64,000 nucleotides of DNA from Macrostomum lignano (Eukaryota), in contig NIVC01000620.1 in assembly GCA_002269645.1 (NCBI GenBank), positions 444,979 to 508,978 on the forward strand. Reading direction: 5' to 3'. The notes below the pieces were generated by a model. It worked only from the letters and a program-made list of their open reading frames with translations. It did not search any database and was not told where the DNA came from. This document shows, piece after piece, positions 2 through 59,621 of this stretch. Position 1 is the first letter of the stretch, and every line of letters begins with the position of its first letter. The translations under genes were made by a program, and so were the position numbers.

Positions 2-5299
<5,298 letters not shown>

Positions 5300-20181: not shown

Positions 20182-21304
20182 ATGTCACTAAAATGTCAAA
20201 AATTTACTCGGCGAGACAGAACTTTTACCACTTTACTTTTGGCTGCATGGCTGTTCGGCATGGCCCTGTATGGGCTGGCCTACAAAACGGCGACTGCAGG
20301 TGAGTCAAAACTTGTCCTTTTTCAAGGAGATCTCAACTTGAGCACCAGCACGAAGTAAAGCTCAGATTTTGTGCTGCTAGTGGACTTAGGAGTTTGAAGT
20401 TTAAAGCAACCAATAATTTTCGATATGTGCAGATTTCTGGATGTTTGACAGAGATTTTGTTAGAACTTTAGAATCCATTCTAGAGTTTTAAGTTGGTATA
20501 AAATCCCCATTTTGAGCCTAGGAATGCAGGAGCCTTGATTTTCGGCTTTTTCGGGTCAAATTAGTCCGACAAGTTGTCGATTGAACATCTGTTGCAATTC
20601 TAAATAAAATATTCGATTATCTCTTGTTGATTAATATTTGAAAATATCGGTCTCGTGTTGCAATGAAGGCGGAATTCTACATGTAAATGTCAGCTATACA
20701 TTCAGAGGCAGAATGTGCTTTTTATGTTAAAAAAATCCAGCTCATAGGTGTTAAATGCTTCCTTCGCCTTTGCAAGCAATTCTTATCTAAACCGAGTCAT
20801 TTTTATAAGTTCAGAATGTAAACAGCATTAAATAGCTCTGCCTTTAATAGCAGCTGATGCCTCAAGGTACGGTAGAATGCTAGATTACAGGTGTAAATGT
20901 ACATTACTGTCTACAGCACAAGAGAAGAAAGAATCAATTAAACTGGATTGACAGTAGTCTAGGTGATGTCGGTAACTTGAAAAGGTTTTCCACCAACCAT
21001 GACTACCATTTGATCTTCCACCAGGTTTAACGTCCCAAGGTGACAATCCGTCCGACTTTAACTTTGGAACCAGTGTCGATGAAAGCAGTTCGCACCTGCG
21101 ACACCTACTGTTTGTTCATGTTCACAGCAATTGTACGCCTCGATCAGTGGAGACTTACCCACCTGACCTGTTCACTCTGGAGCAGAAACAGCACGGAGCA
21201 ATTATTATTCATATTGCAGTTGCCGTGTGGCTGTTTGCCGCTTTGGCTGTGATCTGCAATGACTACTTTCTGGCTTCAATGGAGGTGCTTTGCGATGGTA
21301 AGTG

Positions 21305-21348
<44 letters not shown>

Positions 21349-21385
21349 GCTACTACTACTACTACTGCTACTACTACTACTACTG

Positions 21386-21447
<62 letters not shown>

Positions 21448-21490
21448 GCTACTACTACTACTACTACTGCTACTACTACTACTACTACTG

Positions 21491-21568
<78 letters not shown>

Positions 21569-21569
21569 T

Positions 21570-21619
<50 letters not shown>

Positions 21620-21630
21620 TTACTACAACA

Positions 21631-21703
<73 letters not shown>

Positions 21704-21706
21704 TTG

Positions 21707-21747
<41 letters not shown>

Positions 21748-21750
21748 GCG

Positions 21751-21814
<64 letters not shown>

Positions 21815-21815
21815 T

Positions 21816-21881
<66 letters not shown>

Positions 21882-21908
21882 CACTACTACTACTACTACT
21901 ACTACTAT

Positions 21909-21995
<87 letters not shown>

Positions 21996-24900
21996 CACTA
22001 CTTATGTACTTTGTAACACTTTCAGTTCTGCACCTGAAGCCGGACGTCGCAGGCGCCACCTTCATGGCCGGCAGCAGCTCAGCTCCGGAGCTGCTCACCT
22101 CAATAATCGGCGTGTTCTTCGCCGAGAGCGACGTCGGTGTGAGCACGATCGTTGGCAGCGCCGTGTTCAACATCCTCATGATTGTGAGCATGTGCGGCCT
22201 GTTGTCCTCCAGGCTGGTCTGCCTGTCCTGGTGGCCGCTATTCAGAGACTGCAGCTTCTACTGCGTCAGCGTTGTCGCGTTGGTCGCGGTCATCTACGAC
22301 GGTTTGGTGACTTGGTGAGCGGTTGTCACTCTGTTAAGCCATTGTATTAGCTGAGAATGTAGAACCAGGTAAGCGAGGTCTCAAGGTATAAGAATTTTTT
22401 ATTCCTTATAAGTCGCAGCAACTAAAATCGTTAAAAATAATAACGAATCACCTCTAAAAGGCACAGGGTAGAGTGTTCAGGTTGAAAAGCTACGTGACCA
22501 ATTAGATAGAATCAAGGACAACTTAAGTAGAAGGACGCAACACTCAAAATATACGAGTATATGGTAAATGTTTTGAAGGCAACTTTTCGCCGAAAAATAC
22601 ACTACAGAGATAGGAGATTTTTTAATTTTTTCAGCACAAAAGTTGTTATTGCTTTTGATAAGAGAAAGACTCAGTGCTCATCTTTTGATATGTTGTGCCT
22701 TCCTTATTGCTCTATTGAAATTCATAAAGCTTCTTGTTCAGAAAATTAGGATTTCGAGTTTAGCGTCCTATATATATGTTACTTAAGTAGTCCTTTGGAT
22801 AGAATACGATAGAAAACTCAAGGATGAAGGCGCAACCCAGGGGGGCCGTAGCCCAGCGGTAGCGCAGCTGCTCTGGTGTGCCAGCGACCCAGGCTCGATT
22901 CCAAGTGCAGTCACATTAATTTTGGGCTGAATTGGAATCTCGGCTTGGCTCTGCTCGTGCAATTAACGGCCTTGAGAGCCAACCCCTCAAGGCGCAGTGA
23001 TGTGTACATGCCCTGTACACTTGAAATAAAGTTAGGGCCGCTGTACACTCCTGTGTGAGTGTGTGCCTGCGTACGTATCCGCGCGCTTGTGTGCCTGCTC
23101 AGGGGAGTCGGCGGAATGGGCAGTAATGCCTCTCGCCGGTTGTGTGCCCATGTCGCTTAAAGTGCGCCAGGGTACCCCCCTGCCTCTAATAATAAAAAAG
23201 GCGCAACCCAACTTACACGCAGACTTTACACTACTAAGTCAGTAGTATCATTCATATAAGTCTACAGACTACACTTTGTGTTACTGTAGTTTTCAGTAGT
23301 TTTCAGTTCCTTTGTAATTGTCTAAGAAACCAAGTTTCCCATCCTTCCACTTCAATTTAATGTCAATTTAATTCTATTGTAAACTTCAGGTTCGAGTCCG
23401 TAATCCTGGTAGGCATGTACATCATGTACATAGTGTTGATGTTCTTCAATGATCGCCTGGACAGCGCAATATCAAGCCGGTATCCCAGCCTGGGCACCGG
23501 GGCAGCCTACAAGCTCTATGGAAAAACTGACGCCATCGACAATGAGAGGGAGGTGTTGCTCAGCCAGTCTGGCGAATCGCCGAGAGGATATGCCAGCATT
23601 GACTTGCCTCTGGTTTCAGTCACTGGTAAATGCAAACATTTTTATGTGACCAGATATAGAGCATTAGCTAATGTCTGCGGGCCAGGTGAGGAGAGGAGAG
23701 AGGATAGGAGATGAGATATGAGATGAGAGTAGAGGTAAAAGAGAGAGAATATATGAAGAAGAGGAGAGAGAAGGGGGGAAAGGGAGAAAAATAGAAAAGG
23801 GAGAGGATCGAGAGAAGGGGGAGAGAGGATCGAGAGAAGGGGGAGAGAGGATCGAGAGAAGGGGGAGAGAGGATCGAGAGAAGGGGGAGAGAGGATCGAG
23901 AGAAGGGGAGAAAGGATCGAGAGAAGAGGGTTGAGAGAGGATCGAGAGAAGAGGGTTGAGAGAGGATCGAGAGAAGAGGGGGGAGAGAGGATCGAGAGAA
24001 GAGGGGGATAGAGGATCGAGAGTAGAGGGGCAGAGAGGATTGAGAGAAGAGGGGAGAGAGAGGATCGAGAGAAGAGGGGGAGAGAGGATCGAGAGAAGAG
24101 GGGGAGAGAGGATCAAGAGAAGAGGGGGAGAGAGGATCGAGAGAAGAGGGGGAGAGAGGATCGAGAGAAGAGGGGGAGAGAGGATCGAGAGAAGAGGGGG
24201 AGAGAAGATCGAGAGAAGAGGGGGGATCGAGACAAGAGGGGGAGAGAGGATCAAGAGAAGAGGGGAGAGAGGATCGAGAGAAGAGGGGAGAGAGGATCAA
24301 GAGAAGAGGGGGAGAGAGGATCGAGAGAAGAGGGGGAGAGAGGATCGAGAGAAGAGGGGGAGAGAGGATCGAGAGAAGAGTGGGAGAGAGGATCAAGAGA
24401 AGAGGGGGAGAGAGGATCGAGAGAAGAGGGGGAGAGAGGATCGAGAGAAGAGGGGGGAGAGAGGATCGAGAGAAGAGGGGGAGAGAGGATCGAGAGAAGA
24501 GTGGGAGAGAGGATCGAGAGAAGAGGGGGGAGAGAGGATCGAGAGAAGAGGGGGAGAGAGGATCGAGAGAAGAGGGGGAGAGAGGATCGAGAGAAAAGGG
24601 GGAGAGAGGATCGAGAGAAGAGGGGGAGAGAGGATCGAGAGAAGAGCTGGGAGAAAATAGGTAATAAAATTGAGAAGAGATCCTGGATTGCTATTGCGAA
24701 TTTGAAGTTAATAACTACGGGGGTATTTTTGATAAAAGTCCCTCATTCAGAGACGGAAACTTTCTTTCTTTACATTCGTCAAAGCCCCAGAAGACCAGGG
24801 TCCAGAGTCGCCATTTCTGATGCCTCAGGGCTTTCTCCGCCGAACCAGCTGGATCTGCATGCTGCCGTGGACCTGCGCATTCTTTGTCAGCATTCCCGAC

Positions 24901-40399: not shown

Positions 40400-41598
40400 A
40401 GAACATCCCATCTCCGTAAAAGACTCTCCGCTGCCGCTCTGACCGCTCTGACTTTGTCAAATCTGCCGCTGATTCTCTGCTGCTGCATCGCTCTCGGCCA
40501 CTCGCTCGAATTCGGCCACTTGAGCTGCTTTGTGGACGAAGAAACTCCAAACCGAGACCTCACCGGTCTTGTTGGCTTATCCATTGTCGGACCTTACTCG
40601 AAGACACCGGAGGAGGGGGACGTCGCACTTTATGGCAGCTTGACTTTAGAAGTTTGCACGAAATCTGCACGTATGGAAAATTCCGGTACTTTTCCGTTCA
40701 GTATTCAGGTGCTTGCTTCTGCGGAAACTCGTACGGCAGATTCGGCAGGGCAGCCGACAGCGACTGCAACATGGCCTGCGCTGGCAACTCCGCCCAAATC
40801 TGTGGAGGGACGTCGCGAAACTCTGTGTACCCGCAGGTCTACAATCGTTCAGGTGAGCGTAACGGAATTGCAATCGATGCGGTTCTACTTCTACACGTAC
40901 ATGTACTTTTCCAGCTGCACTGGGCACAGCATCCATGGTTTAGCACGCGTTTGCTTCAGCATTAAATATTAAGATTTCAAAGCATTTCACAAAGTCAAAC
41001 TAGATTTCTGATCCAACACAGATAAACAAATATAATTAATTTTCCGTAGGGCTCCGGGCACGCTATTAGAACGCTGTCAAAAAATGGTTTCACAACCAAA
41101 GGTTTTGTCAATCTTCAGCCCGTTCTGCTGATTTCTGGGCACGTATAAGAGCACGGATAACTGTACGAACTCATACATGTACACTCTCTGTGCCTTGGGA
41201 TTTAGCACTCCTAGGTGTGAGCGCGCAACGAACACTGAGCCAATTTTTCAAAAGAAAATATACAGCCAGAGTTTGAATGCAGTTTCAGCATGTGACTGAC
41301 TACAGTCGACATGTCGAAGGTCTCACAAGAGTAGCGGTGCACCACTCAATGTCTTTTTTTCCTTTCAGATAGCAAGCATTTCATTTTGGCTGACCGAGAC
41401 TACGTGAACCTGACCTCTACCAGCGGCCCGTTCTACCGCACCGAGCAGCCCGTCAGGAGTTTGACTGAGTACGTATATCGCTGCGTCACAGACTGCCAGG
41501 CCGTGCTGTTCCACCTGGACGCCTGCCACCTGCTGAGATTCGCCGTTCTGCCACACGAGCTGAAGAACGTCGCTGGGATGTTCGTCACCCGCGTGTGA
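40400..41598 (+). pseudogene. WSC plus PAN/Apple-like gene, copy 3, with a 1-nt frameshift at about 40657 (pseudogene or assembly error); start codon not found
   Basis: ...LILCCCIALGHSLEFGHLSCFVDEETPNRDLTGLVG...LTLEVC continues in another frame as HEICTYGKFRYFSVQYSGACFCGNSY...CAGNSAQICGGTSRNSVY; donor at 40853; exon 41369-41598; same intron phase as copies 1 and 2. Confidence 0.7.
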
Positions 41599-41639
41599 GG
41601 GACCGCCAGATTCGGAGCAAGGAGACTCGGTTGCTGAAG

Positions 41640-43030
41640 CCTCTGATTGGTGAACTCTGTGATTTCTGACACCCTCTGATTGGTGAACTCTGTGATTTCT
41701 GACACCCTCTGATTGCTGCAATTCTGTGATTTCTGACACCATCTGATTGCTGCAACTCTGCAATTTCTGACACCATCTGAGTGCTGAATATTGTGAATTC
41801 TGACACCATCTGAGTGCTGAACTCTGTGATTTCTGACACCATCTGATTGCTGAACTCTGTGATTTCTGACACCATCTGATTGCTGAACTCTGTGATTTCT
41901 GACACCCTCTGATTGCTGAACTCTGTGATTTCTGACACCCTCTGATTGCTGAACTCTGTGATTTCTGACACCATCTGATTGCTGAACTCTGTGATTTCTG
42001 ACACCCTCTGATTGCTGAACTCTGTGATTTCTGACACCATCTGATTGCTGAACTCTGTGATTTCTGACACCATCTGAGTGCTGAACTCTGTGATTTCTGA
42101 CACCATCTGATTGCTGAACTCTGTGATTTCTGACACCATCTGATTGCTGAACTCTGTGATTTCTGACACCATCTGATTGCTGAACTCTGTGATTTCTGAC
42201 ACCCTCTGATTGCTGAACTCTGTGATTTCTGACACCATCTGATTGCTGAACTCTGTGATTTCTGACACCATCTGATTGCTGAACTCTGTGATTTCTGACA
42301 CCATCTGATTGCTGAACTGCGTGATTTCTGACACCCTCTGATTGCTGAACTCTGTGATTTCTGACACCATCTGATTGCTGAACTCTGTGATTTCTGACAC
42401 CATCTGATTGCTGAACTCTGTGATTTCTGACACCATCTGATTGCTGAACTCTGTGATTTCTGACACCATCTGAGTGCTGAACTCTGTGATTTCTGACACC
42501 ATCTGATTGCTGAACTCTGTGATTTCTGACACCCTCTGATTGCTGAACTCTGTGATTTCTGACACCATCTGATTGCTGAACTCTGTGATTTCTGACACCA
42601 TCTGATTGCTGAACTCTGTGATTTCTGACACCATCTGATTGCTGAACTCTGTGATTTCTGACACCATCTGATTGCTGAACTCTGTGATTTCTGACACCAT
42701 CTGATTGCTGAACTCTGTGATTTCTGACACCATCTGATTGCTGAACTCTGTGATTTCTGACACCATCTGATTGCTGAACTCTGTGATTTCTGACACCATC
42801 TGAGTGCTGAACTCTGTGATTTCTGACACCATCTGATTGCTGAACTCTGTGATTTCTGACACCCTCTGATTGCTGAACTCTGTGATTTCTGACACCATCT
42901 GATTGCTGAACTCTGTGATTTCTGACACCCTCTGCTTGCTGAACTCTGTGATTTCTGACACCCTCTGATTGCTTAACTCTGTGATTTCTGACACCATCTG
43001 AGTGCTGAATATTGTGATTTCTGCAAATCT
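41640..43030. repeat. 33-bp minisatellite (tctgattgctgaactctgtgatttctgacacca), about 42 units
   Basis: Period 33; one minus-strand frame is stop-free, (MVSEITEFSNQ)n. Confidence 0.95.
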
Positions 43031-44556
43031 AACCACAGTTAATATATTTACTCCTGGCGTGTCACCTGAGTTCCAAAAAAATAAATATTTTTTGCTGCCA
43101 AAAAGAAAGAATTCTAGCGGCTTCTGAGCAGTAGCTTAATGGCATATAAATTTCTTTTTTTATCTTGATCGATCGACATAACGGCAGTAGTAGCAACCAA
43201 AGCAGATATTGCTGCCACACTATCGACTCTAGCATTATCAGGCATCAGATTTACAGCAGCGAATTAACTGAAGAAACTTCTCAATTCACACGGAGCTGCT
43301 GTATGAGCTATTGTAACACTCGAATATCACACCAGTTTCTACGAGTATAAGGCTAGCACCCCAGATGTTGCGAAAAAAATTTAGAGTGTTATACTTCGAT
43401 ATACTACTTGCACAGCAGAAGCCACAATAGCTTCTGTAGGTGACATCTCAGGTGTGTATACTATCTATTATTTACACACCTTGAAACGTATAGCACCTGT
43501 ATCATTTATTTACTTTAGTACACTTACAAAGGGAATTGAGAATATGAATTGCAGCACTCGATGGATTAGAATGATAAAGCTGTTAGTTAGTTTAACAGCA
43601 GTTAGTGAGCAGGCTAAATACAGGTATAATAATTAACACCAGGAATTCCTAACCATTTTTCTGCCCGTCGAAATACCATGGATTCAAAGGCATTTTTTGC
43701 TTCTGCAGTACGCAAGAAGGCAGATACACGAATTTCAAGGACACATGGGCTTGTTTGCTTTTTGCACCTGGCGCCATTTCAATCAAGAACCAAGTAGTTA
43801 GACACTCCAGACAGTCGAGATATTCAACAGTTGTGCTTGTGTCACCTGGTGTCACCGAAGGCCCACAACCTTTTGAAGTCATAGCAGATGCATCCACGTG
43901 TGGTTGAGATGCTGATAAAATTTTGAGACGCAGTGCTTACTTGAATACACTTGTATCGAAACAAGTCTGAATATTCCCTCACCTTTGAAGTTCTACCGTT
44001 AAAGCACCGAGTAACAAACACACATTCCCTTGCAAACAACGTGAAAATGTTAAAATCTGGTGAGACAGTGTTTTTCAAGCAAAGTTAAGCGTAGTCTAAA
44101 TTTGTTTGTAAGCAGAGTTAGCTTTGCAAAGCTCACTAGCTACAATGTGAGTAAGTTTTAAATAAATTAGTGCTAGGAGTCAGATTTATTTCGTATTTGT
44201 AGCTCCATCTGATGAGGTAGTGACAGTCGACTGGGTATTGAAGTCTACGACATTTGCCCGCGGGAAGTCTTCACAGGAACTTCACAGGACCTTGAGATTA
44301 GGCGAATTAGGGAAGACTTATCTCCACCTAGTCACGAATCTTATCATTCAGTCGATCATCTGCAGCCACGTTTATCAATTAAGAGTTAATTATAAAGTGT
44401 ATTATTAATCTAAACTGCTGATAAATTTATATAGTCAAGGTATATAACTATACTACTATAGATGATAACTTTATCAGAATCGAATAATAATCATCACTCA
44501 ATCTAAATCTTATCTGGAGTTGTCTTATCAGCGTTATTAATTTACTTGTACCGCAT

Positions 44557-50655: not shown

Positions 50656-53600
50656 ATGGAGCCGGACTCTTCTAAAGGAGTCGAAGTGCCGAATGATGGC
50701 GATCCGATGGTATCGTTTGAGCCTCAGCCGACGCCGCCGCCACCGCCATCAACGCAGCCTCCGCCGCCAACACAGCCTCCACTGCCAACGCCACCAAATG
50801 ACGACGACTGCAAACGTGAACTACTGCTTCAGCTGACACAACAGAAGAAATTTGATGACGCAAAGAAGATTATACAAAGTTTAAAGAACACAGCTGCACC
50901 TTTACGTCGAGATCAGCTGCTACGGACAGCTGTTCACTACTCCGCGATGGATCCAAGCGGGTTTGAGCTATTGAAGGATCTCACAGAACTGGTTGGCGCA
51001 GGCTGCTTGGCAACCCCAGACCGCAATGGAGTGACTCCGTTTCACTTCGCAGCGCAATATCTGCCTGATAATGCCTGGAATACATTTATTAACCCGCTTG
51101 TAACGGAAAGCCATCTTAAGAAGAGAGATAACGCAGGAAATACTTGCGCACACTATGCAGTCCGCGAACAGCGTGCCAATGATGGAGTAATACTTTCTAT
51201 AGTCCATAAGTCGGGGCCGAGATGCCTGGATGTTTCAAATGAGATTAAAGAGACGCCTCTTCAGCTTGCGGTAAAAAACTGCACCTCAAAAACAGTTAAA
51301 AAGCTGTTGAAAGAGCTCAATCCGAGGTGGCTTCAGGAGGCAGATGAAGAAGGCAACACAGTAGCACATTACGCGGCCATGAACCCGAGAGGCGCGGTAC
51401 TTAAAGTTGTAAAAAAAGTGGGCGATCCCGTTCTTTTTTGGTCTAACAATCACAAAGAAACCGTTTTACAAATAGCGCTTCAGTTCTGCTCGATTTCGAA
51501 ATCGCACTTGCTTCTGAAAAAAGCTGTAGCAAAGGCTGCTAAATTGCCAGGGTCGAAAGAGTCGAAAAAACTCCGGCAGCAGGATTCGACTGGAAAGACA
51601 TGCTTACACAGTACAGCGATGCTTAGCGACAGGCAAGAAATTCTGCTTCAGGCAGTAGAGTTAGGGAAGCCACTCGGACCCGAATGTCTAGCCTGGAAGA
51701 ACCAAGCCGGAAGTTCAGTGCTGCACGTTGCACTTGAGCATGGCCGCCAGTCCGAACCCGCAAGCACAGAAGTCTTAGTCAAATTGATTTCAAAATCTAC
51801 AAAAGACGTTCTAGCAAAGGTTGATGCAAACGGTAATACATGTCTTCACATAGCCGCTAAGAGGAGAGACAATCATCGATTGTTACGTGAGGCTATCCAG
51901 AAGTGCGGAAAAGATTGCATGTTCTGGCCAAACAAAAGAAATCAATTGGTAATGTTCTTTGCTATTGGAGTTGTCTCTTCCAAAGAACTAGAAGAGGCAT
52001 TGAAGAATGACATCCCTTCTGACGATTTCGGCAACACTCTGTTGCATTACCTCCTTCAAGGCTACAGCAGCGAGTCAGTCTGTGTTGGCTTAACCGATTC
52101 TGCAATCGAAAAGCAGTCTACAACTGATATTCTTGAGAAGATCGATATCCTTATTGCTTTTGGCGTGGATCCACTTGAGGAGAATATTGCCGCTCAAAAC
52201 TTTCTACATTGGGCTAAGTTGCCGCAAAATTTGCTTAAGAAGCTTTTAACAGATTTTTCCGAATCTCATGGGCTTAAGGCCCTGTACGAAAAGCTAGATT
52301 GTGGGTCAAATGGACTCCACTTGGTTCACACGTACTCAAGAAAGTACAATTTGGAAGTTTTATTAGAGCCATTATCGAAACTGTCGGATTTAAAAGAAAA
52401 TAGACTTTTGAGCTTGGCTGTTTCCAAGGGCGACAACAAGGGTGCCACCTGTTTTCATTTCGCCTGCGAAGGTGGCCAAACAAGCAGTTTTCGATTCTTA
52501 TTGAAAAAAGGTCCAAATATTAGCGTCAGCATCAAGACGCTGACAGATTCCGAACTGTCTTGCATTGACTTTGCTATTGATAGAGGTCACCTCGAGCCGG
52601 TAATGAAAGTCTATACAGAATTTGAAGCTAAGGCACTTCAGAAAAAAGGAATAGGCTCCAAAGCAGCATCAAATGCCGCAAGAATTACTCTCTTGCGCCT
52701 CGTTGATCCGATTAAGAAGGCCGTCTCGCTGCCGGACCGGGTGGCAGCTCAGAAAGCGCTTGCTTCAATAATCGACCAGCTATCCGACGATTCAACTGCC
52801 TGTCGGAAGGGCAGAAGAGGCCTGCAAATACTAGAAAGGGCGATAACGCTCAACTCAACAAAACTATTTCGCAGCGCTTTAAAGATGAACTTTGTTAACG
52901 CCACAACGGAGAGACTTTTGCCAGAGTTCTTGCGCTGCCAGCAGCATCGAAATTTAGAGCTAAGCGTGATAAATTGCCTGTGCATGGGTGACAAAATTGG
53001 AAGGCACGGTTGGGTCGATGCTTTTTCTGAGTTGTCTGTCATTGACATTACATGTTCACACTCTGAGCACTACGATGAGATTTTGTTGGACTTGGTACTC
53101 ACTAGGCAATTTGAGCTGATTCCGGCCAGCATTAACCTACTCATCAGGCTGGGCCCCGAGATCGACAAGCTACGCTCGCAGGCACGTGGCAAGCACGCTA
53201 CGCTGCAGGAGTTGTACAGAAAAGTGCAGGAAATCGCTGTCAATTCTCTTGAAGAGTTGTTCGCTAGCGCTACTCAAAAGCGTCAGCGAGAGCTTCTCTT
53301 TGAGTTCCTTCAGGGTCGAATCGAAAGCGCAGAAGGCGTGTCCGGTCCCAAGTTTCCATTTAGAACTCTAAACAAGAAAATAAGGCATGGCGCCGTAACA
53401 GACATGATTGAGGAAGCTGACTGTAACGAGATTTTCGCGACAGACTGCATCTACAGCTTGGTGCAGCAGGAGTGGAAGACTGGACGAAGGCCCTGCAGGT
53501 GTAGCACATGCTCAGTTTCGAATAGCAAACAAAGTAGTGAAGACTGCTGCTGCAGGTGCACCCGCGAGTTCTATTCACCGCGAGCAAAATTCGGGACTTA

Positions 53601-54843
53601 CTGTACCTTTTTCGCCTTTCTAATTATATACTTTACATGGTACACGGTTGACTTCAAAAATAGTTTCGCCCACATTTCAACTGACATTCCTTTGATATTC
53701 TATTGGCTATCCTTCGTTTCCCAAGAAGTTGTCGACTTCCGCAGACGGCGGAAGCGGCGCAGCTATCTCGTATGCGGCCGCCTCTGCAGATGGCCCACTT
53801 ATTTTGAGGACTTACTGAACTTTCTAGAATGGCTCGTAATCGTTTTTTTACTGGTTGGTCTGATTTTGAAATGGATACTGCTTGCTAATTCGCTACCTTT
53901 AACTGCAGCATACCCCTGTCAGATGGTATTTAGCGTCGCTTTCGGTCTGCTAATGTTTCGGGCAGTGCACTTTCTGAGCCTATCAGCCGTCATTGGTCCT
54001 GTAATAACGATGCTATGGAGTCTAGTATTCAATGACTTGCTGCCATTTCTGGCAATTATCGCCGTCATCATAATCGCTTTCGGAGTGTTTTTCTTCAACC
54101 TACTTTTCTCTGTGACTGGAGTGAACACCCAGTCAACTTACTACAACAGTCCTTGGTACAGCTGGGACGCCACTGTTGCAGCGATAACTCTACCATTTAA
54201 CATACTGTTTACAAACTTTGAGAAGCTAGAATTTGGGAAGACGTTAACGAATATCACGATTGGAAAATCAGCCCACACGCAAGGAATCGGAGTGTTTGAG
54301 AATCTGATGCTGTTCCTTTTCATGGGCTGGTGAACATTGTTATGCTGAACCTACTGATCGCGCTCTTCAACCTTCGGGTCAACCGCATGGCTAATGAAGC
54401 TCTGGGGATCTGGCGAAGGACGTACTTCGGCATGCTGAAGGAGTACCAAAACTTGAGTCCGGTTCCGCCACCGCTGTCATTTCTGTGGTACATCTACGAT
54501 TGCTTTGTGAGAAAATGCTCTTGCAAAAAATGTAAAAACTCTGCGGGAGTGGCTCCGAAGAAGAAGGTTTGTTTTGTTTTTTTAATGGCGCGGTGACTCA
54601 GTAGGCTAATTGACAATTGTTTTGTCTCTATTTCAGACCGAAAACTGGTGGCGTGACCCTAAAAAGTATCCCGAGGAGTACATGGATTTTCTGGAGTTCC
54701 AAGCTAACCAATTAAGGCGGTTCCGCGCTTCTCTGCTATCCAATTCCAACTCCAATAGCCGAGATGATCTCATTGATCAATTGAGTCATCGATTGAAAGT
54801 ACTGGAAGAACAGACTCAGGCGGTACATGAGAAGCTGAAGTAA
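50656..54843 (+). CDS. TRP-superfamily cation channel: Pro-rich N-terminus, about 15 ankyrin repeats, TRPM-like 6-TM region, TRP box and short coiled coil (about 1372 aa after correcting a 1-nt frameshift at about 54325)
   Basis: Exon 50656-54566 and exon 54637-54843 (phase 0). Ankyrin motifs DRNGVTPFHFAA, DNAGNTCAHYAV, DANGNTCLHIAA; pre-S1 FYSPRAKF; S3 YFEDLLNFLEW; S5 NDLLPFLAII...AFGV; S6 NIVMLNLLIALFN; TRP box IWRRTYFGMLKEY...PVPPPLSFL. Confidence 0.88.
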
Positions 54844-55669
54844 CCAGCTGGTTAAAACAAATATTCCATTATTTTTTCGCTTATGCAAGGCTCTTTAATG
54901 ACCAATAATTTTAATTTTATAGCATATTTTGAGGAGAACTTAAGTCTTCAAAGAAAGCTATTACAGTGTAGGCTTCCAATTAAGAGTTTGCAAAGGTTAT
55001 AAATAAATCCTGTTCAGAATTGTTGGCATAAGAAAAGCGACACAAGGAGCAAGGAAATATTTCAAAGGCATTGCCAGTGGCGTACGCAGGGGGGGGGGGG
55101 GGCCGCGGCCCCCCTTCCTCAATCGCCCGCCAAAAAAAATTGATAGTATTGCTATTCAGGTATTCTTGTTAAAGCAAAATCGGTTTACTCAGAAAAACAA
55201 AAAATTGCAAGTATTCTAGTATTCTGTTACTCAAGTGTAATCGAGATTGAAATGGAAAATACGTTATTCATTGCAAAAAACAATGATAATCCGCTCTTTT
55301 GACATCCGGTTTTTTCACTGTTCGAGCCATATTGCTATGGTCAGTTTGAAAATATTTATATTTTAACAAATGTAGGGTATAAATTTGAAGAGTAATTTTG
55401 TGATTGAAATATTTTTATTCGGTTCTGTGGACACTTCAAAGACTTTTTGTTTATGCACAGATTTACGATTTTTGTTATTCGAATGTTTATTCTAGAATGT
55501 TAGTATCAACGCTCTATTTATTGTTCGAGCAAATGCTATAAAATTAATAAGAAAAATTCTTTTAACATACAGATATCTTAAAATTATACTCGTAGTTTCA
55601 CCTCTGGACTTATTTCATTTAAATTTACGTCTCATTTAGACAGTGTCTCTAAGAACATTTTATTCTGCA

Positions 55670-57535
55670 ATATCCCCTGCCACCGATTTCCAGTCACTAA
55701 TTCCCCTGCCACCAATTTCCTGTCACTAATTCCCCTGCCACCGATTTCATGTCACTAATTCACCTGCCACCAATTTCATGTCACTAATTCCCCTGCCACC
55801 GATTTCATGTCACTAATTCCCCTGCCACCAATTTCCTGTCACTAATTCCCCTGCCACCGATTTCATGTCACTAATTCACCTGCCACCAATTTCATGTCAC
55901 TAATTCACCTGCCACCAATTTCATGTCACTAATTCCCCTGCCACCGATTTCCTGTCACTAATTCCCCTGCCACCGATTTCCTGTCACAAATTCTTCTGCT
56001 ACCAATTTCCTGTCACTAATTCCCCTGCCACTAATTTCCTGTCACTAATTCCCCTGCCACCGATTTCCTGTCACAAATTCCCCTGCCACCGATTTCCTGT
56101 CACTAATTCCCCTCTGCCACCGATTTCCTGTCACTAATTCCCCTCTGCCACCGATTTCATTCCCCTGCAACCGATTTCCTGTCACTAATTCCCCTGCCAC
56201 CAATTTCCTGTCACTGATTCCCCTGCGACCAATTTCCTGTCACTGATTCCCCTGCCACCGATTTCCTGTCACTGATTCCCCTGCCACCAATATCCTGTCA
56301 CTAATTCCCCTGCCACCGATTTCCTGTCACTAATTCCCCTCTGCCACCGATTTCCTGTCACTAATTCCCCTGCCACCGATTTCTTGTCACTAATTCTCCT
56401 GCCACCGATTTCCTGTCACTAATTCCCCTCTGCCACCGATTTCCTGTCACTAATTCCCCTCTGCCACCGATTTCATTCCCCTGCAACCGATTTCCTGTCA
56501 CTAATTCCCCTGCCACCGATTTCCTGTCACTGATTCTTCTGCTACCTACTTTATGTCACTAATTCCCCTGCCACCGATTTCCTGTCACAAATTTCCCTGC
56601 CACCGATTTCCTGTCACAAATTCCCCTGCCACCGATTTCCTGTCACAAATTCTTCTGCTACCAATTTCCTGTCACTAATTCCCCTGCCACCGATTTCCTG
56701 TCACTAATTCCCCTTTGCCACTGATTTCCTGTCACTAATTCCCCTGCCACCGATTTCCTGTCACTAATTCCCCTCTGCCACCGATTTCCTGTCACTAATT
56801 CCCCTGCCACCGATTTCCTGTCACTAATTCCCCTCTGCCACCGATTTCCTGTCACTAATTCCCCTGCCACCGATTTCCTGTCACTAATTCCCCTCTGCCA
56901 CCGATTTCCTGTCACTAATTCCCCTCTGCCACCGATTTCCTGTCACTAATTCCCCTGCCACCGATTTCCTGTCACTAATTCCCCTCTGCCACCGATTTCC
57001 TGTCACTAATTCCCCTGCCACCAATTTCCTGTCACAAATTCCCCTGCCACCGATTTCGTGTCACAAATTCCCCTGCCACCGATTTCCTGTCACTAATTCC
57101 CCTGCCACCGATTTCCTGTCACTAATTCCCCTCTGCCACCGATTTCCTGTCACTAATTCCCCTGCCACCGATTTCCTGTCACTAATTCCCCTCTGCCACC
57201 GATTTCCTGTCACTAATTCCCCTGCCACCGATTTCCTGTCACTGATTCCCCTGCCACCAATTTCCTGTCACTAATTCACCTGCCACCAATTTCCTGTCAC
57301 TGATTCCACTGCCACTAATTTCTTGTCACTGATTCCCCTGCCACCAATATCCTGTCACTAATTCCCCTGCCACCGATTTCCTGTCACTAATTCCCCTCTG
57401 CCACCGATTTCCTGTCACTAATTCCCCTGCCACCGATTTCCTGTCACTAATTCCTCTGCCACCGATTTTCTGTCACTAATTCCCCTGCCACTAATTTCCT
57501 GTCACTAATTCCCCTGCTAGCAATTTCACGTCACA
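55670..57535. repeat. 29-bp satellite (attcccctgccaccgatttcctgtcacta) with 31-bp variants
   Basis: Period 29 (55811 to 55840); 29/31 alternation at about 56700-57200. Confidence 0.95.
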
Positions 57536-57559
57536 AATTCCATGAGCGCTTCTTGTCTG

Positions 57560-57740
57560 TGGGTGAGCGCCCCTGCCTCTGGGTGGGGGTGCCCCTGTAT
57601 CTTGGTGGACGCCCATATCTTTGAGTAGGCGCCCATATCTCTGGGTGAGCGCCCATATCTCTGGGTGGGCGCCCCTATCTCTGGGTGGGCGCCCCTATCT
57701 CTGGGTGGGCGCCCCTATCTCTGGGTGGGCGACCCTGTCT
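57560..57740. repeat. 20-bp GC-rich repeat (ctgggtgggcgcccctatct)
   Basis: About 8 units abutting the 29-bp array. Confidence 0.85.
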
Positions 57741-59621
57741 CTGACTGACTGACTCCCATTATTTTCATCAAGTTAAACAACCTAATTAGGCACTTAACGT
57801 AAATTCTAAATTTGCAGATCGCTCTCGTACTGTATGGACCACTAGCAGTAGGCTGCCAGCGTTTTTTGTGTGTTCGTCCTCCAAATCTTACGATTATCAA
57901 TATTTGACATACATGTAGTTTTGCTTATTAACGTATTTTTAGGTCACATATTGTACTCTCTCAGGGATTACTAGCTCGTATTGAGGTATTTGAATTTTTA
58001 GTCTTCATGATGAAGTTGTCAATCATTTTTACAACGGGTTTTATAAGTTTTGGCCCAGAAAGTCTGAAAAGGTCATGTGATTTTCGAATTTAGTTCTTAT
58101 TATTCTTCGTTGATATGGAATCAAAGATCATTGTTCTGGTCTCACCAGACAATCACGTCGACCTCCGCGGTAACTGAAATTATTGATCCAGTCAATAATG
58201 AGAAGCGAAATTGTTTATATTGACTAAGATCGGTAGATGTACACGAAAAATATTTGAGTGCAAGATTACAAACTCAATGATAAAAAACAAACATCGTTCA
58301 ACAAAGTAATTTAAGCAAGACTATTTAATTAAAAATTCGATACCTGCTTATTTCATTCAATCATAGTTTGATTTGTTCTTCCAAAAACAATAAAGCCATC
58401 GGCCTACGCGAAAGTCCTTCATCGCTAGAGTTATATTTCCAGTTCGTGATAATCATTTCCCATGTCCCACGCACTCAAATCCCAGTTCCTATTTAGCACT
58501 TACTTATCCCAGCTCTATATCGACCAAGTAATTACCGGAACTCTAATCCTACTCATTTTTTTCGCACCTATCTTACCATCCTCATCTACTTTCCAATCCT
58601 CCTCTCCATCTCTGTCATTCGCGTGCAGAGTCCCACAGTTCTTCCCTCAGCCCTTAGCAACAGCAATTTTCCACGAATCCTATTCCCGATCACCCGATAG
58701 GCCTCCCAGCGTCCTCGCTTAGTGCTGTACCATGCTTATATGGAGTATTTTTCCATAAAAGTATCTGGCCACTTCAGGCTCTTCCGCGCAGCTCACTTCC
58801 CTCATCCTCTCTCTCTCTCTGTTCCTCATTCGCTCTCCCCTCCTACTTAAGCTACCTTCAGTCTCTGCTTGCGCATGATCCCGCAGCAAAAAAGTGTCTA
58901 TAAGCCCTTAGGCGCTATTTCTGCTCCCCCTCTTAGCCTTCGTCCTCCGGAATATCCTCCGGTCGGGTCTCCCCATCTCTTCCTCTTGATCGCCCCGGCC
59001 CGTCCCCTCTTCACATCGCTCTTCAATTTTGCGGCCCCAGCCAGCGGCTATAAAGTCAGAAAGCGTCCAACAAACCTAATTTACTGCAGGCCCCGTTCAG
59101 GAGAGAGAATTAAAAAAAGAGCAGCATATACAACGGCTGCAACCGCGTCCTCGGCTCTTTTCCAGCAGAGCGCGGAGCCACCTGGACTTTGGCGAGTAAA
59201 AAGCTCCGTCAGAGTGTCTAGGTGGATCCAGCAACGGTGAAGCTGTAACGTTTTAACCTCCCCTTCCCCAATTCGACTTTTTACCCCCCCCCCCTCCCTG
59301 CCTGGCCGGTGGGCCATCCAGTTGTGTCCCAGCACGGCATCGAAGCTTCTCTATTTGTTCCTTTTCTTCCAGACTGAACGGTTGCACGAAATTTAACCTT
59401 TTTTGATTACTGGATGCCCCACACAGCCTATATTTAGAGATTGCAACATGCCATGTAGCAGCAGTACGTCTAACCTTCGCTTCGCATGTAAACATTGATA
59501 TATTCATCGCTAACGTACTAAGGTAAGTGTAATCATAATTTTTTCTAATTGCTAATGGGCTAGTTAGGTTATTAAGTACTGTTTCCTAAAAAAATATGTA
59601 GATGACAATGAGACAACGACA

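What the first reader, a model, noticed from the sequence alone, without database searches (positions are those of the whole stretch)
50656..54843. Ankyrin-repeat N-terminus on a TRPM-like pore
Seen: about 15 ankyrin repeats, then a linker and TM region with TRPM-style signatures (IEEADCNEIF...LVQQEW, FYSPRAKF, SQEVVDF, YFEDLLN, LPFNILF pore helix, IWRRTY...EY...PVPPPLS). No MHR1-2/SLOG or NUDIX region is evident. Known: canonical TRPMs lack ankyrin repeats, whereas TRPA/N/C/V have them with different TM signatures. Inference: a domain-shuffled, lineage-specific sensory channel.
Basis: partly seen in the sequence, partly recalled or inferred. Interest (0 to 1): 0.75.

Follow-up and report, generated by a model that had tools for sequence, protein, structure and literature searches.

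The report
Ankyrin-bearing TRPM-like channel, flatworm paralogue
This is a Macrostomum lignano (free-living flatworm) gene for an ion channel with a TRPM-type pore and ankyrin repeats where TRPM channels normally carry a melastatin/SLOG domain; parasitic flatworms are already known to have this design (TRPM_MCLZ, the meclonazepam target), so the gene is a divergent new member of a known kind, not a new class.

Summary
Window 50656-54843 (+) encodes a 1372-aa protein. It has a Pro-rich N-terminus, an ankyrin array (aa ~55-665; 10 clear repeats, about 15-16 by spacing), a helical linker, S1-S6, a TRP helix, a rib helix and a C-terminal coiled coil. No SLOG or NUDIX domain was found. The channel half is TRPM-type by sequence, by profile and by predicted fold, and is not TRPA, TRPN or TRPC.

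Two caveats apply:
- This copy has a 1-base frameshift inside S6 (a G3 run at 54324-54326, G4 in an intact 99.5%-identical copy). It could be a long-read assembly error or a very recent lesion.
- A 70-bp intron lies near the 3' end.

The ankyrin-for-SLOG design is not private to this gene. M. lignano has about 13 paralogue lineages, and it also has ANK+MHR3/4+TM relatives. Trematodes and cestodes carry TRPM_MCLZ, published from 2023 to 2026 as a "TRPM-like" channel with N-terminal ankyrin repeats. The window's linker is homologous to the TRPM_MCLZ-type linker, so an MHR4-like module is kept.

The gene is not a TRPM_MCLZ orthologue, because the drug-pocket signature is not kept. A common origin of all ankyrin-bearing groups is only weakly supported (38-55% bootstrap). 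A sensory role is untested.

Verdict: new member of a known kind, of moderate interest.

The parts
50656..54566 (+). Exon 1 of the channel gene. It runs from Met1 to aa 1304 and is interrupted by the frameshift at 54324-54326. An alternative in-phase donor (GTGAGA) lies at 54507.
   Evidence: ORF 50656-54333. Sequence read and translation across the shift. Same start and length as the intact copy P0017. UniProt models P0009 and P0010 use the 54507 donor.
50656..50811 (+). Pro-rich, probably disordered N-terminus (aa 1-52).
   Evidence: Translation. No Pfam hit there.
50818..52650 (+). Ankyrin-repeat array (aa ~55-665). Ten clear repeats have cores at aa 125, 161, 198, 233, 267, 313, 352, 393, 459 and 596. 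Degenerate units lie near aa 55, 88, 427, 513, 552 and 633.
   Evidence: Pfam Ank_2 1.2e-22, Ank_4 7.8e-19, Ank 7.1e-15. Motif scan and self-built repeat HMM. NOMPC and TRPA1 ankyrin regions match in the PDB. aa 560-665 are modelled as three helix pairs with pLDDT 72-85.
52693..53577 (+). Helical linker between the ankyrin array and S1 (aa 680-974). It takes the place of TRPM MHR3/4.
   Evidence: AF2 model with pLDDT mostly 85-96. Foldseek alignments to TRPM structures span ~700-790 columns of a 693-aa query.
53035..53484 (+). MHR4-like / pre-S1 module (aa 794-943). It contains LLDLVLTRQFELIP, IAVNSLEELF and IEEADCNEIFATDCIYSLVQQEW.
   Evidence: hhalign of the family linker against the TRPM_MCLZ-type linker: 94.7% probability, E 5.9e-8, 126 columns. 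That linker matches canonical TRPM MHR3/4 at 96.6% and the ANK+MHR group at 99.5%.
53578..53976 (+). S1-S4 voltage-sensor-like domain (aa 975-1107). Candidate Ca2+-site residues are E1024 and D1027 (S2) and N1055 and E1058 (S3). S4 carries R1102 and H1105.
   Evidence: Helices in the AF2 model. Alignment with nvTRPM2, drTRPM2, TRPM1 and TRPM3 puts these residues on the TRPM ExxQ / NxxD / RxxH positions.
53992..54452 (+). S4-S5 linker, S5, pore helix (aa 1168-1184), filter region FTNFE (aa 1185-1189), S6 and TRP helix (to aa 1266; IWRRTYFGMLKEY).
   Evidence: AF2 helices. Alignment. PDB phmmer and profile matches to TRPM over this span.
54324..54326 (+). G3 homopolymer where the intact sister copy has G4. 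The missing base shifts the frame inside S6 and creates TGA at 54331-54333.
   Evidence: Sequence. Gene-to-gene alignment with L004 shows 21 substitutions and this single indel. P0009, P0010 and P0017 read FMGLVNIV.
54567..54636 (+). 70-bp phase-0 intron (GT..AG).
   Evidence: Sequence and frame. The same junction is in the annotated intact copy.
54637..54843 (+). Last exon. It holds the rib-helix motif EEYMDFLEFQANQLRRFR (aa 1317-1337), the C-terminal coiled coil (aa 1346-1371) and the TAA stop.
   Evidence: Translation. It aligns with the nvTRPM2 post-TRP region up to query aa 1365. Helices are in the AF2 model.
55002..55007 (+). AATAAA, a candidate polyadenylation signal about 160 nt after the stop. 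This is an inference from sequence only.
   Evidence: Sequence read.

Best explanation
The locus is one of four near-identical copies of a Macrostomum lignano gene (Mlig010193). The gene belongs to a Macrostomum-expanded subfamily of ankyrin-bearing TRPM-like cation channels.

Shown:
- Each subunit has about 15 ankyrin repeats where canonical TRPMs carry the SLOG (MHR1/2) domain.
- It has a helical MHR3/4-like linker.
- It has a TRPM-type S1-S6 with a TRP helix, a rib helix and a C-terminal coiled coil.
- Its closest characterised relative is flatworm TRPM_MCLZ.

Inferred:
- The protein assembles as a tetramer through the coiled coil and conducts cations non-selectively, as Sm.TRPM_MCLZ does.
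- Gating is driven from the S1-S4 cavity. Intracellular Ca2+ probably acts as co-factor, because all four TRPM Ca2+-site positions keep oxygen side chains (E1024, D1027, N1055, E1058) and the S4 R/H pair is kept.
- The ankyrin tier replaces the nucleotide-sensing SLOG tier as the cytosolic platform that binds partners or couples to gating.

The natural stimulus is unknown. The many paralogues in a free-living worm make a sensory role plausible but untested. The window copy itself is truncated in S6 by a 1-base homopolymer deletion. That deletion is more likely an assembly error or a very recent lesion than old decay.
For: Organism and copies:
- Hits are named M. lignano. The 90% cluster holds an intact 1372-aa copy and two other truncated copies.

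TRPM-type channel half:
- PDB phmmer gives nvTRPM2 at 5.6e-17 over aa 965-1365, followed by TRPM2, TRPM8, TRPM1, TRPM4 and TRPM7. The NOMPC TM region scores only 14 bits, and TRPA1 matches only in the ankyrin region.
- With a profile, the top 60 PDB hits are all TRPM at 156-202 bits.
- An HMM built from the family alone scores TRPM_MCLZ-type and ANK+MHR proteins at 140-167 bits, canonical TRPMs at 107-143, NOMPC at 62-71 and TRPC4 at 35.
- The AF2 model of aa 680-1372 has pLDDT 84.3 and pTM 0.81. Its top 50 Foldseek hits are all TRPM structures over ~700-790 columns.

Phylogeny:
- In the NJ tree, the TRPM-like ingroup separates from TRPN/TRPC at 87% (75-81% in re-runs).
- The window family is supported at 98% (94-99%).
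- The window family plus three further M. lignano relatives is supported at 94%.

Architecture shared with relatives:
- ANK+Ion_trans is found in Opisthorchis, Schistocephalus and M. lignano proteins.
- ANK+PF25508+Ion_trans is found in the M. lignano proteins P0071, P0075 and P0079.
- The published TRPM_MCLZ pocket spacing is matched exactly by P0050, P0068, P0097, P0102 and P0109 (residues from PMC10788528).

Linker homology chain:
- F-M 94.7%, M-A 99.5%, A-C 99.0%, M-C 96.6%.

Constraint:
- The window copy differs from the intact copy by 13 synonymous and 8 non-synonymous substitutions and one indel in a G run.

Functional precedent:
- Sm.TRPM_MCLZ gives a linear I-V with reversal near 0 mV and is activated through the VSLD pocket (PMC10788528).
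Against: - Common ancestry of all ankyrin-bearing groups has only 38-55% NJ bootstrap support. Independent acquisition of ankyrin repeats is therefore not excluded.
- No TRPS reference was available and no ML or Bayesian tree could be run.
- The family linker shows no direct match to canonical MHR3/4 (F-C hhalign negative; Pfam PF25508 not hit). The MHR4-like call rests on a transitive chain and on a model whose alignment contained TRPMs.
- The TM similarity of the single sequence to TRPM (63 bits) is no greater than that of NOMPC to TRPM1 (71 bits). The branch is long and may be subject to attraction artefacts.
- The filter glycine is replaced (FTNFE) and the pore-loop cysteine pair is lost in this subclade. 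Permeation may therefore differ, or could even be lost.
- No expression or functional data were available here.
- The window copy as assembled cannot make S6-TRP.
Confidence: 0.8

Rival explanations
1. A separate domain shuffle in the Macrostomum lineage: an ankyrin array was fused onto a TRPM pore independently of TRPM_MCLZ.
For: The super-clade of ankyrin-bearing groups has only 38-55% bootstrap support. The family's ankyrin repeats are atypical and longer than those of the relatives. The family is restricted to M. lignano plus one environmental contig.
Against: The linker between the ankyrin repeats and S1 is homologous to the TRPM_MCLZ-type linker (94.7%), so the junction region is shared. 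M. lignano itself holds intermediate forms: ANK+MHR3/4+TM (P0071, P0075, P0079) and ANK+TM (P0055). The family HMM scores ankyrin-bearing relatives above canonical TRPMs.
Confidence: 0.12
2. The window copy is a dead pseudogene, and the frameshift in S6 is real.
For: The assembled sequence has TGA at 54331-54333. Two other copies of the same gene are also truncated in the annotation, at different places (P0015 and P0016).
Against: The only indel in 4.19 kb against the intact copy is a G4-to-G3 change in a homopolymer. From my own recollection, this contig comes from an assembly of M. lignano built from long reads, in which homopolymer indels are a typical error. Substitutions are 13 synonymous to 8 non-synonymous, which gives a rough dN/dS near 0.2 on my own estimate. 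There are no further stops downstream in the shifted frame.
Confidence: 0.3
3. It is a TRPN, TRPA or TRPC channel whose TM motifs merely resemble TRPM.
For: Long N-terminal ankyrin arrays are the hallmark of TRPN and TRPA. The best whole-protein PDB hit by E-value is NOMPC (2.3e-17).
Against: That NOMPC hit comes from the ankyrin region, and its TM part scores 14 bits. The family HMM gives NOMPC 62-71 bits and TRPC4 35 bits, against 107-167 for TRPM-type proteins. The tree separates the ingroup from TRPN/TRPC at 75-87%. The Foldseek top 50 are all TRPM. The TRP box is IWRRTY..KEY..PVPPPLS, with a TRPM-type rib helix and coiled coil.
Confidence: 0.02
4. It is a gene-model artefact in which two neighbouring genes (an ankyrin protein and a channel) were read as one.
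For: Several database models of relatives are split or fused. The Schistocephalus gene is split into ANK and Ion_trans pieces. Opisthorchis P0050 has two TM domains.
Against: Here a single uninterrupted ORF of 1225 codons runs from the first ankyrin repeat through S6 with no stop or intron. The same holds in the intact copy and in the intronless relatives P0075 and P0035.
Confidence: 0.01

Closest known systems
Flatworm TRPM_MCLZ (Schistosoma mansoni Smp_333650, the meclonazepam-activated 'TRPM-like' channel; PMC10788528, PMC11731825, PMC12861061)
   Same: - N-terminal ankyrin(-like) repeats in place of the MHR1/2-SLOG domain.
- A TRPM-type S1-S6, TRP helix and C-terminal helices.
- No NUDIX domain.
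- Few exons (3 in S. mansoni, 2 here).
- A homologous pre-S1 linker.
- S2 Glu and the S4 Arg/His pair are conserved (E1024, R1102, H1105).
- Probable TRPM_MCLZ orthologues (P0050, P0068, P0102) are among the nearest non-Macrostomum relatives.
   Different: - TM identity to the Schistocephalus orthologue is only about 25%.
- The pocket signature is not kept: there are no S1 histidines, and Tyr is replaced by Phe at aa 1020.
- The filter glycine and the pore-loop cysteines are lost.
- The ankyrin array is longer.
- The family is expanded to about 13 lineages in a free-living worm, where parasites have a single gene.
- Monophyly with TRPM_MCLZ is only weakly supported.
M. lignano ANK + MHR3/4 (PF25508) + TM channels (P0071 = Mlig012389, P0075, P0079)
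   Same: Same genome, N-terminal ankyrin repeats, TRPM-like TM domain, intronless or intron-poor genes, and a shared post-TRP FLxxQAxxxRxxR motif.
   Different: They keep a Pfam-detectable MHR3/4 domain, the canonical EExRQ / DxWNxxD Ca2+-site motifs and the pore-loop cysteines. TM identity to the window protein is about 15-17%.
Canonical TRPM channels (TRPM1-8, Nematostella TRPM2)
   Same: TM fold and sequence signatures (S1 SPxxKF, S4 RxxH, S6 NLLIA, TRP W, PPP motif), rib helix, coiled coil and overall predicted structure.
   Different: There is no SLOG/MHR1-2 domain, no Pfam-detectable MHR3/4 and no NUDT9H or kinase domain. The protein lies outside the alpha (TRPM1/3) and beta (TRPM2) clades, each of which has 100% support. 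It has ankyrin repeats, which the literature treats as absent from TRPM and TRPS (PMC7306681).
TRPN (NOMPC) and TRPA1
   Same: A long N-terminal ankyrin solenoid in front of a six-TM TRP channel. The ankyrin regions match at 5e-9 to 6e-12.
   Different: The TM domain is far more distant. TRPN has an EWKF-type TRP box with no rib helix or coiled coil. The tree places them as the outgroup.

Membership tests
TRPM (canonical melastatin family) | TRPM-type S1-S6, TRP helix and post-TRP rib helix / coiled coil | tested here: met
   PDB phmmer and profile hits are all TRPM. The Foldseek top 50 are all TRPM. The motif alignment agrees.
TRPM (canonical melastatin family) | N-terminal MHR1/2 = SLOG (LSDAT_euk) domain | tested here: not met
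   No PF18139 or PF18171 hit at E<=1. Ankyrin families occupy aa 80-690 instead.
TRPM (canonical melastatin family) | MHR3/4 (Pfam PF25508, TRPM2-like domain) before S1 | tested here: inconclusive
   Pfam gives no hit. Direct hhalign to canonical MHR3/4 is negative. A transitive chain F-M 94.7% and M-C 96.6% supports homology. The full-length structural alignment to TRPMs also supports it.
TRPM (canonical melastatin family) | Placement inside a recognised TRPM clade (alpha: TRPM1/3/6/7; beta: TRPM2/4/5/8) | tested here: not met
   The alpha and beta reference clades each have 100% support and exclude the family. The beta-like and gamma clades and TRPS could not be represented.
Ankyrin-bearing 'TRPM-like' group (TRPM_MCLZ type) | Ankyrin repeats at the N-terminus instead of SLOG, on a TM domain that clusters next to TRPM | tested here: met
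   Definition taken from PMC11731825 and PMC12861061.
Ankyrin-bearing 'TRPM-like' group (TRPM_MCLZ type) | Common descent with TRPM_MCLZ (one clade) | tested here: inconclusive
   The NJ super-clade of ankyrin-bearing groups has 38-55% support. Linker homology to the TRPM_MCLZ type is 94.7%.
TRPM_MCLZ orthologue | VSLD pocket residues at the published spacing (S1 H, +4 H, +37 Y, +41 E, +116 R, +119 H/Y/F) | tested here: not met
   The pattern is matched by P0050, P0068, P0097, P0102 and P0109, but by no member of the window family. The window protein has F1020, E1024, R1102 and H1105 only.
TRPN (NOMPC) | NOMPC-type TM domain and TRP box after ~29 ankyrin repeats | tested here: not met
   The TM part scores 14 bits by phmmer. 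The family HMM scores 62-71 bits, against 107-167 for TRPM-type proteins. NOMPC falls in the outgroup in the trees.
TRPA | TRPA1-type TM domain after ~16 ankyrin repeats | tested here: not met
   TRPA1 chains match only aa 85-259, which are ankyrin repeats. No TM match appears among the hits shown at E<=0.01 (60 of 83 listed). No TRPA is in the Foldseek top 50. No TRPA sequence was included in the tree.
TRPC | TRPC-type TM domain, EWKFAR TRP box and TRP_2 domain | tested here: not met
   The family HMM scores 35 bits against TRPC4. The TRP box is IWRRTY. There is no TRP_2 hit. TRPC4 falls in the outgroup in the trees.
TRPS (soromelastatin) | Grouping with ced-11-like sequences; SLOG and often Nudix domains; no ankyrin repeats | not testable with these tools
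   No named TRPS sequence could be obtained. The domain criteria (SLOG, Nudix) are not met, and TRPS is described as ankyrin-free (PMC7306681).

The most novel reading that the evidence does not exclude
The ankyrin-bearing TRPM-like channels form one old branch beside TRPM and TRPS. That branch would comprise TRPM_MCLZ, the M. lignano ANK+MHR3/4 genes and this expanded family. On this reading it kept the ancestral ankyrin repeats of group-1 TRP channels and did not gain them secondarily. The 'ankyrin-free TRPM-TRPS ancestor' inferred in PMC7306681 would then have to be revised, and the window's family would be its most divergent known offshoot.
Probability: 0.12. Interest if true: 0.6.

Novelty: new member of a known kind. 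Interest (0 to 1): 0.35.

Why it matters
TRPM and TRPS are usually described as the TRP families without ankyrin repeats. Flatworm TRPM_MCLZ is the published exception and is also an anthelmintic drug target.

This locus shows that the exception is not confined to parasites. A free-living flatworm carries about 13 divergent paralogue lineages of the same design, together with forms that still keep MHR3/4. That material could be used in three ways:
- to date the SLOG-to-ankyrin replacement;
- to ask what the ankyrin tier does in a TRPM scaffold;
- to study TRPM_MCLZ-type channels in a tractable laboratory animal.

For this particular gene the gain is modest. It is an uncharacterised, already annotated 'hypothetical protein' whose class is now clear.

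Tried and rejected
- A full-length search in the word-indexed protein collection was swamped by ankyrin proteins and returned only NOMPC-like hits.
- A third search with a TM profile found almost nothing new.
- An 89-sequence alignment failed.
- The first AF2 run, with 7 sequences, gave pLDDT 52.6. I discarded it except for the last three ankyrin repeats.
- Two home-made ankyrin HMMs were too insensitive to count the degenerate repeats. One was built from NOMPC repeats and one from the gene's own repeats. The count of 15-16 therefore rests partly on spacing.
- I looked for TRPM_MCLZ sequences in the supplements of two papers and none were held. I used the published residue numbers as a spacing signature instead.
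- I tested whether P0138 was the schistosome channel by residue numbering. It is not.
- I considered and rejected four readings: a TRPN/TRPA/TRPC identity, a fusion artefact of two genes, tandem copies inside the window (tblastn finds only this one), and any link to the neighbouring ORFs (a P4-ATPase exon and low-complexity ORFs).


Full report
WHAT IS THERE

On the + strand a single ORF of 1225 codons runs from 50656 to a TGA at 54331-54333. Reading the DNA shows that the sequence continues in the -1 frame with VNIVMLNLLIALFN..., the second half of a TRP S6 helix. It runs to 54566, then a 70-bp GT..AG phase-0 intron spans 54567-54636, and a last exon runs from 54637 to the TAA at 54841-54843. 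The conceptual product is 1372 aa. Only one copy lies in the window.

ORGANISM, COPIES AND THE FRAMESHIFT

Database relatives are all named Macrostomum lignano.

The window's ORF sits in a 90% cluster with three other copies of gene Mlig010193:
- one intact copy of exactly 1372 aa (PAA53932.1 = P0017);
- two copies truncated at other positions.

I aligned the window gene with the intact copy's locus (L004, contig NIVC01002998.1). The result is 21 substitutions (13 synonymous, 8 non-synonymous) and one indel. The indel is a G3 run at 54324-54326 where the intact copy has G4 and reads FMGLVNIV. The flanks are 95-98% identical, so these are distinct loci.

A lone homopolymer indel and a synonymous excess fit two readings: an error in what I recall to be a long-read assembly, or a very recent lesion. 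I cannot tell which.

DOMAINS

Pfam finds only ankyrin families (Ank_2 1.2e-22 and others) between aa ~80 and 690. It finds no SLOG/LSDAT, no PF25508, no NUDIX and not even Ion_trans.

Ten repeats have a clear GxTxLHxA core. Five or six degenerate units fill the remaining spacing. The last three are modelled as helix pairs.

THE CHANNEL HALF IS TRPM-TYPE

Against PDB sequences:
- aa 965-1365 match Nematostella TRPM2 (5.6e-17), then TRPM2, 8, 1, 4 and 7;
- the NOMPC TM region scores 14 bits;
- TRPA1 matches only in the ankyrin repeats.

A TM profile hits only TRPMs in its top 60 (156-202 bits).

An HMM built from the Macrostomum family alone scores as follows:
- ankyrin-bearing relatives: 140-167 bits;
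- canonical TRPMs: 107-143 bits;
- NOMPC: 62-71 bits;
- TRPC4: 35 bits.

One caution applies. The single-sequence score to TRPM (63 bits) is no larger than NOMPC's score to TRPM1 (71 bits). The family is therefore a long branch.

With a 35-sequence alignment, AlphaFold2 models aa 680-1372 at pLDDT 84.3 and pTM 0.81. The 50 best Foldseek matches in the PDB are all TRPM structures, aligned over ~700-790 columns, that is, including the linker.

RELATIVES

An exhaustive profile search of 1.84 billion representative proteins gave 5466 hits.

About 30 representatives (>270 bits) cover both linker and TM.
- All the named ones I looked up are M. lignano 'hypothetical proteins'.
- They form about 14 lineages in the tree, 13 of them in M. 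lignano.
- The exception is P0035, an intronless gene on a 5.1-kb contig binned into a 'Kangiellaceae bacterium' MAG. It is clearly eukaryotic contamination.

The next tier matches only from the pre-S1 region onward. It mixes canonical TRPMs (SLOG+PF25508+TM) with ankyrin-bearing proteins:
- ANK+TM in Opisthorchis (P0050), Schistocephalus (P0068, named 'TRPM7' by UniRef), P0102, P0059 and M. lignano P0055;
- ANK+PF25508(MHR3/4)+TM in M. lignano P0071, P0075 and P0079.

LITERATURE

Himmel et al. [quoted passage not shown] They did not detect them in TRPS and inferred an ankyrin-free TRPM-TRPS ancestor (PMC7306681).

The Marchant group's papers describe schistosome TRPM_MCLZ (Smp_333650) as follows:
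- it lacks MHR1/2-SLOG and carries N-terminal ankyrin(-like) repeats;
- it is encoded in three exons and was formerly called TRPM7-like;
- it clusters next to the TRPMs as a 'TRPM-like' group;
- meclonazepam opens it through the S1-S4 pocket, with a linear I-V (PMC10788528, PMC11731825, PMC12861061).

I turned the published pocket residues (H827, H831, Y864, E868, R943, H946) into a spacing pattern. P0050, P0068, P0097, P0102, P0109 and their cluster mates match it exactly, so they are TRPM_MCLZ orthologues. No member of the window family matches.

PHYLOGENY

I built NJ trees on S1-TRP with Kimura distances, 274-365 columns and 100-200 bootstraps. TRPN and TRPC4 served as outgroups, and TRPM1, TRPM3, drTRPM2 and nvTRPM2 as references.

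Support values were:
- TRPM-like ingroup versus TRPN/TRPC: 87% (75-81% in re-runs);
- window family: 98% (94-99%);
- window family plus three more M. lignano genes: 91-94%;
- TRPM_MCLZ clade: 100%;
- ANK+MHR clade: 100%;
- alpha and beta TRPM reference clades: 100% each, both excluding the family;
- all ankyrin-bearing groups together: only 38-55%.

The backbone is unresolved and no TRPS reference was available.

THE LINKER

I ran profile-profile comparison of the 400 residues before S1:

| Comparison | Probability | E-value |
|---|---|---|
| family vs TRPM_MCLZ-type | 94.7% | 5.9e-8 |
| family vs ANK+MHR | 62% | not recorded |
| family vs canonical TRPM | no match | - |
| TRPM_MCLZ-type vs ANK+MHR | 99.5% | not recorded |
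| ANK+MHR vs canonical TRPM | 99.0% | not recorded |
| TRPM_MCLZ-type vs canonical TRPM | 96.6% | not recorded |

The shared columns include RQF(D/E)xIP, IAV(N/D)xL and the pre-S1 (A)xC...L...W motif. So aa 794-943 are a divergent MHR4-like module.

HOW IT PROBABLY WORKS (INFERENCE)

In the alignment with TRPMs, three features are kept:
- The four Ca2+-site positions of the S1-S4 domain (ExxQ in S2, NxxD in S3) are E1024, D1027, N1055 and E1058. The family consensus is ExxD/N and NxxD.
- S4 keeps R1102 and H1105.
- S6 (VNIVMLNLLIALFN) and the TRP helix (IWRRTYFGMLKEY) are TRPM-like. A rib-helix motif and a coiled coil follow.

Two features differ. The filter reads FTNFE (Gly replaced by Thr in this subclade), and the pore-loop cysteine pair is missing.

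I therefore expect a tetrameric, non-selective cation channel gated from the S1-S4 cavity with Ca2+ as co-factor. The ankyrin tier would replace the SLOG tier as the cytosolic platform. The stimulus is unknown, and the paralogue expansion in a free-living worm is the only hint of a sensory role.

VERDICT

The gene is a divergent, Macrostomum-expanded member of the already described ankyrin-bearing TRPM-like kind, whose best-known member is TRPM_MCLZ. It is neither an orthologue of that channel nor a new class.

Noticed in passing
window 55673-57541 and 57556-57743: A 29-bp minisatellite (TCCCCTGCCACCGATTTCCTGTCACTAAT, about 64 copies, 89% matches) lies about 0.8 kb downstream of the gene, followed by a 20-bp x 9 array. 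This explains the strong negative GC skew of 56-58 kb. The paralogous locus L004 appears to hold a much shorter array.
   Followed up: partly
window 852-1514 (+): This ORF matches the C-terminal domain of phospholipid-translocating P-type ATPases (PF16212, 5.3e-48). It is probably an exon of a flippase gene at the left end of the window.
   Followed up: partly
L005 (GCA_036350755.1, contig JAZBNS010000602.1), 42-4655: A 1537-aa intronless member of this flatworm channel family sits on a 5.1-kb contig deposited as a 'Kangiellaceae bacterium' MAG (MEE4247282.1). It is almost certainly animal DNA mis-binned into a bacterial genome.
   Followed up: partly
P0050 / P0186 (Opisthorchis viverrini gene models), TM domains at aa ~657-1001 and 1289-1719 of P0050: The Opisthorchis TRPM_MCLZ-type model contains two consecutive TM domains. 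This fits the two alternative exons '3a/3b' reported for trematode TRPM_MCLZ (PMC12861061) being concatenated in the gene model.
   Followed up: partly
window 1515-4283, 9919-10730, 11472-12203, 12951-13711, 21147-22350, 23668-24660: These stretches are open in several frames and on both strands at once, with skewed composition. They are typical of low-complexity or satellite DNA, not genes.
   Followed up: no
window 41585-43036 (-): This 483-codon ORF gives only biased, repeat-driven Pfam matches (apolipoprotein-like amphipathic helices, below the family cut-off). It may be a repetitive coiled-coil protein or no gene at all.
   Followed up: partly
P0015 (988 aa) and P0016 (286 aa), sister copies of the window gene: Three of the four near-identical copies of Mlig010193 are truncated by frameshifts at different places in the public annotation. 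This pattern suggests residual indel errors in the assembly and may affect many M. lignano gene models.
   Followed up: partly
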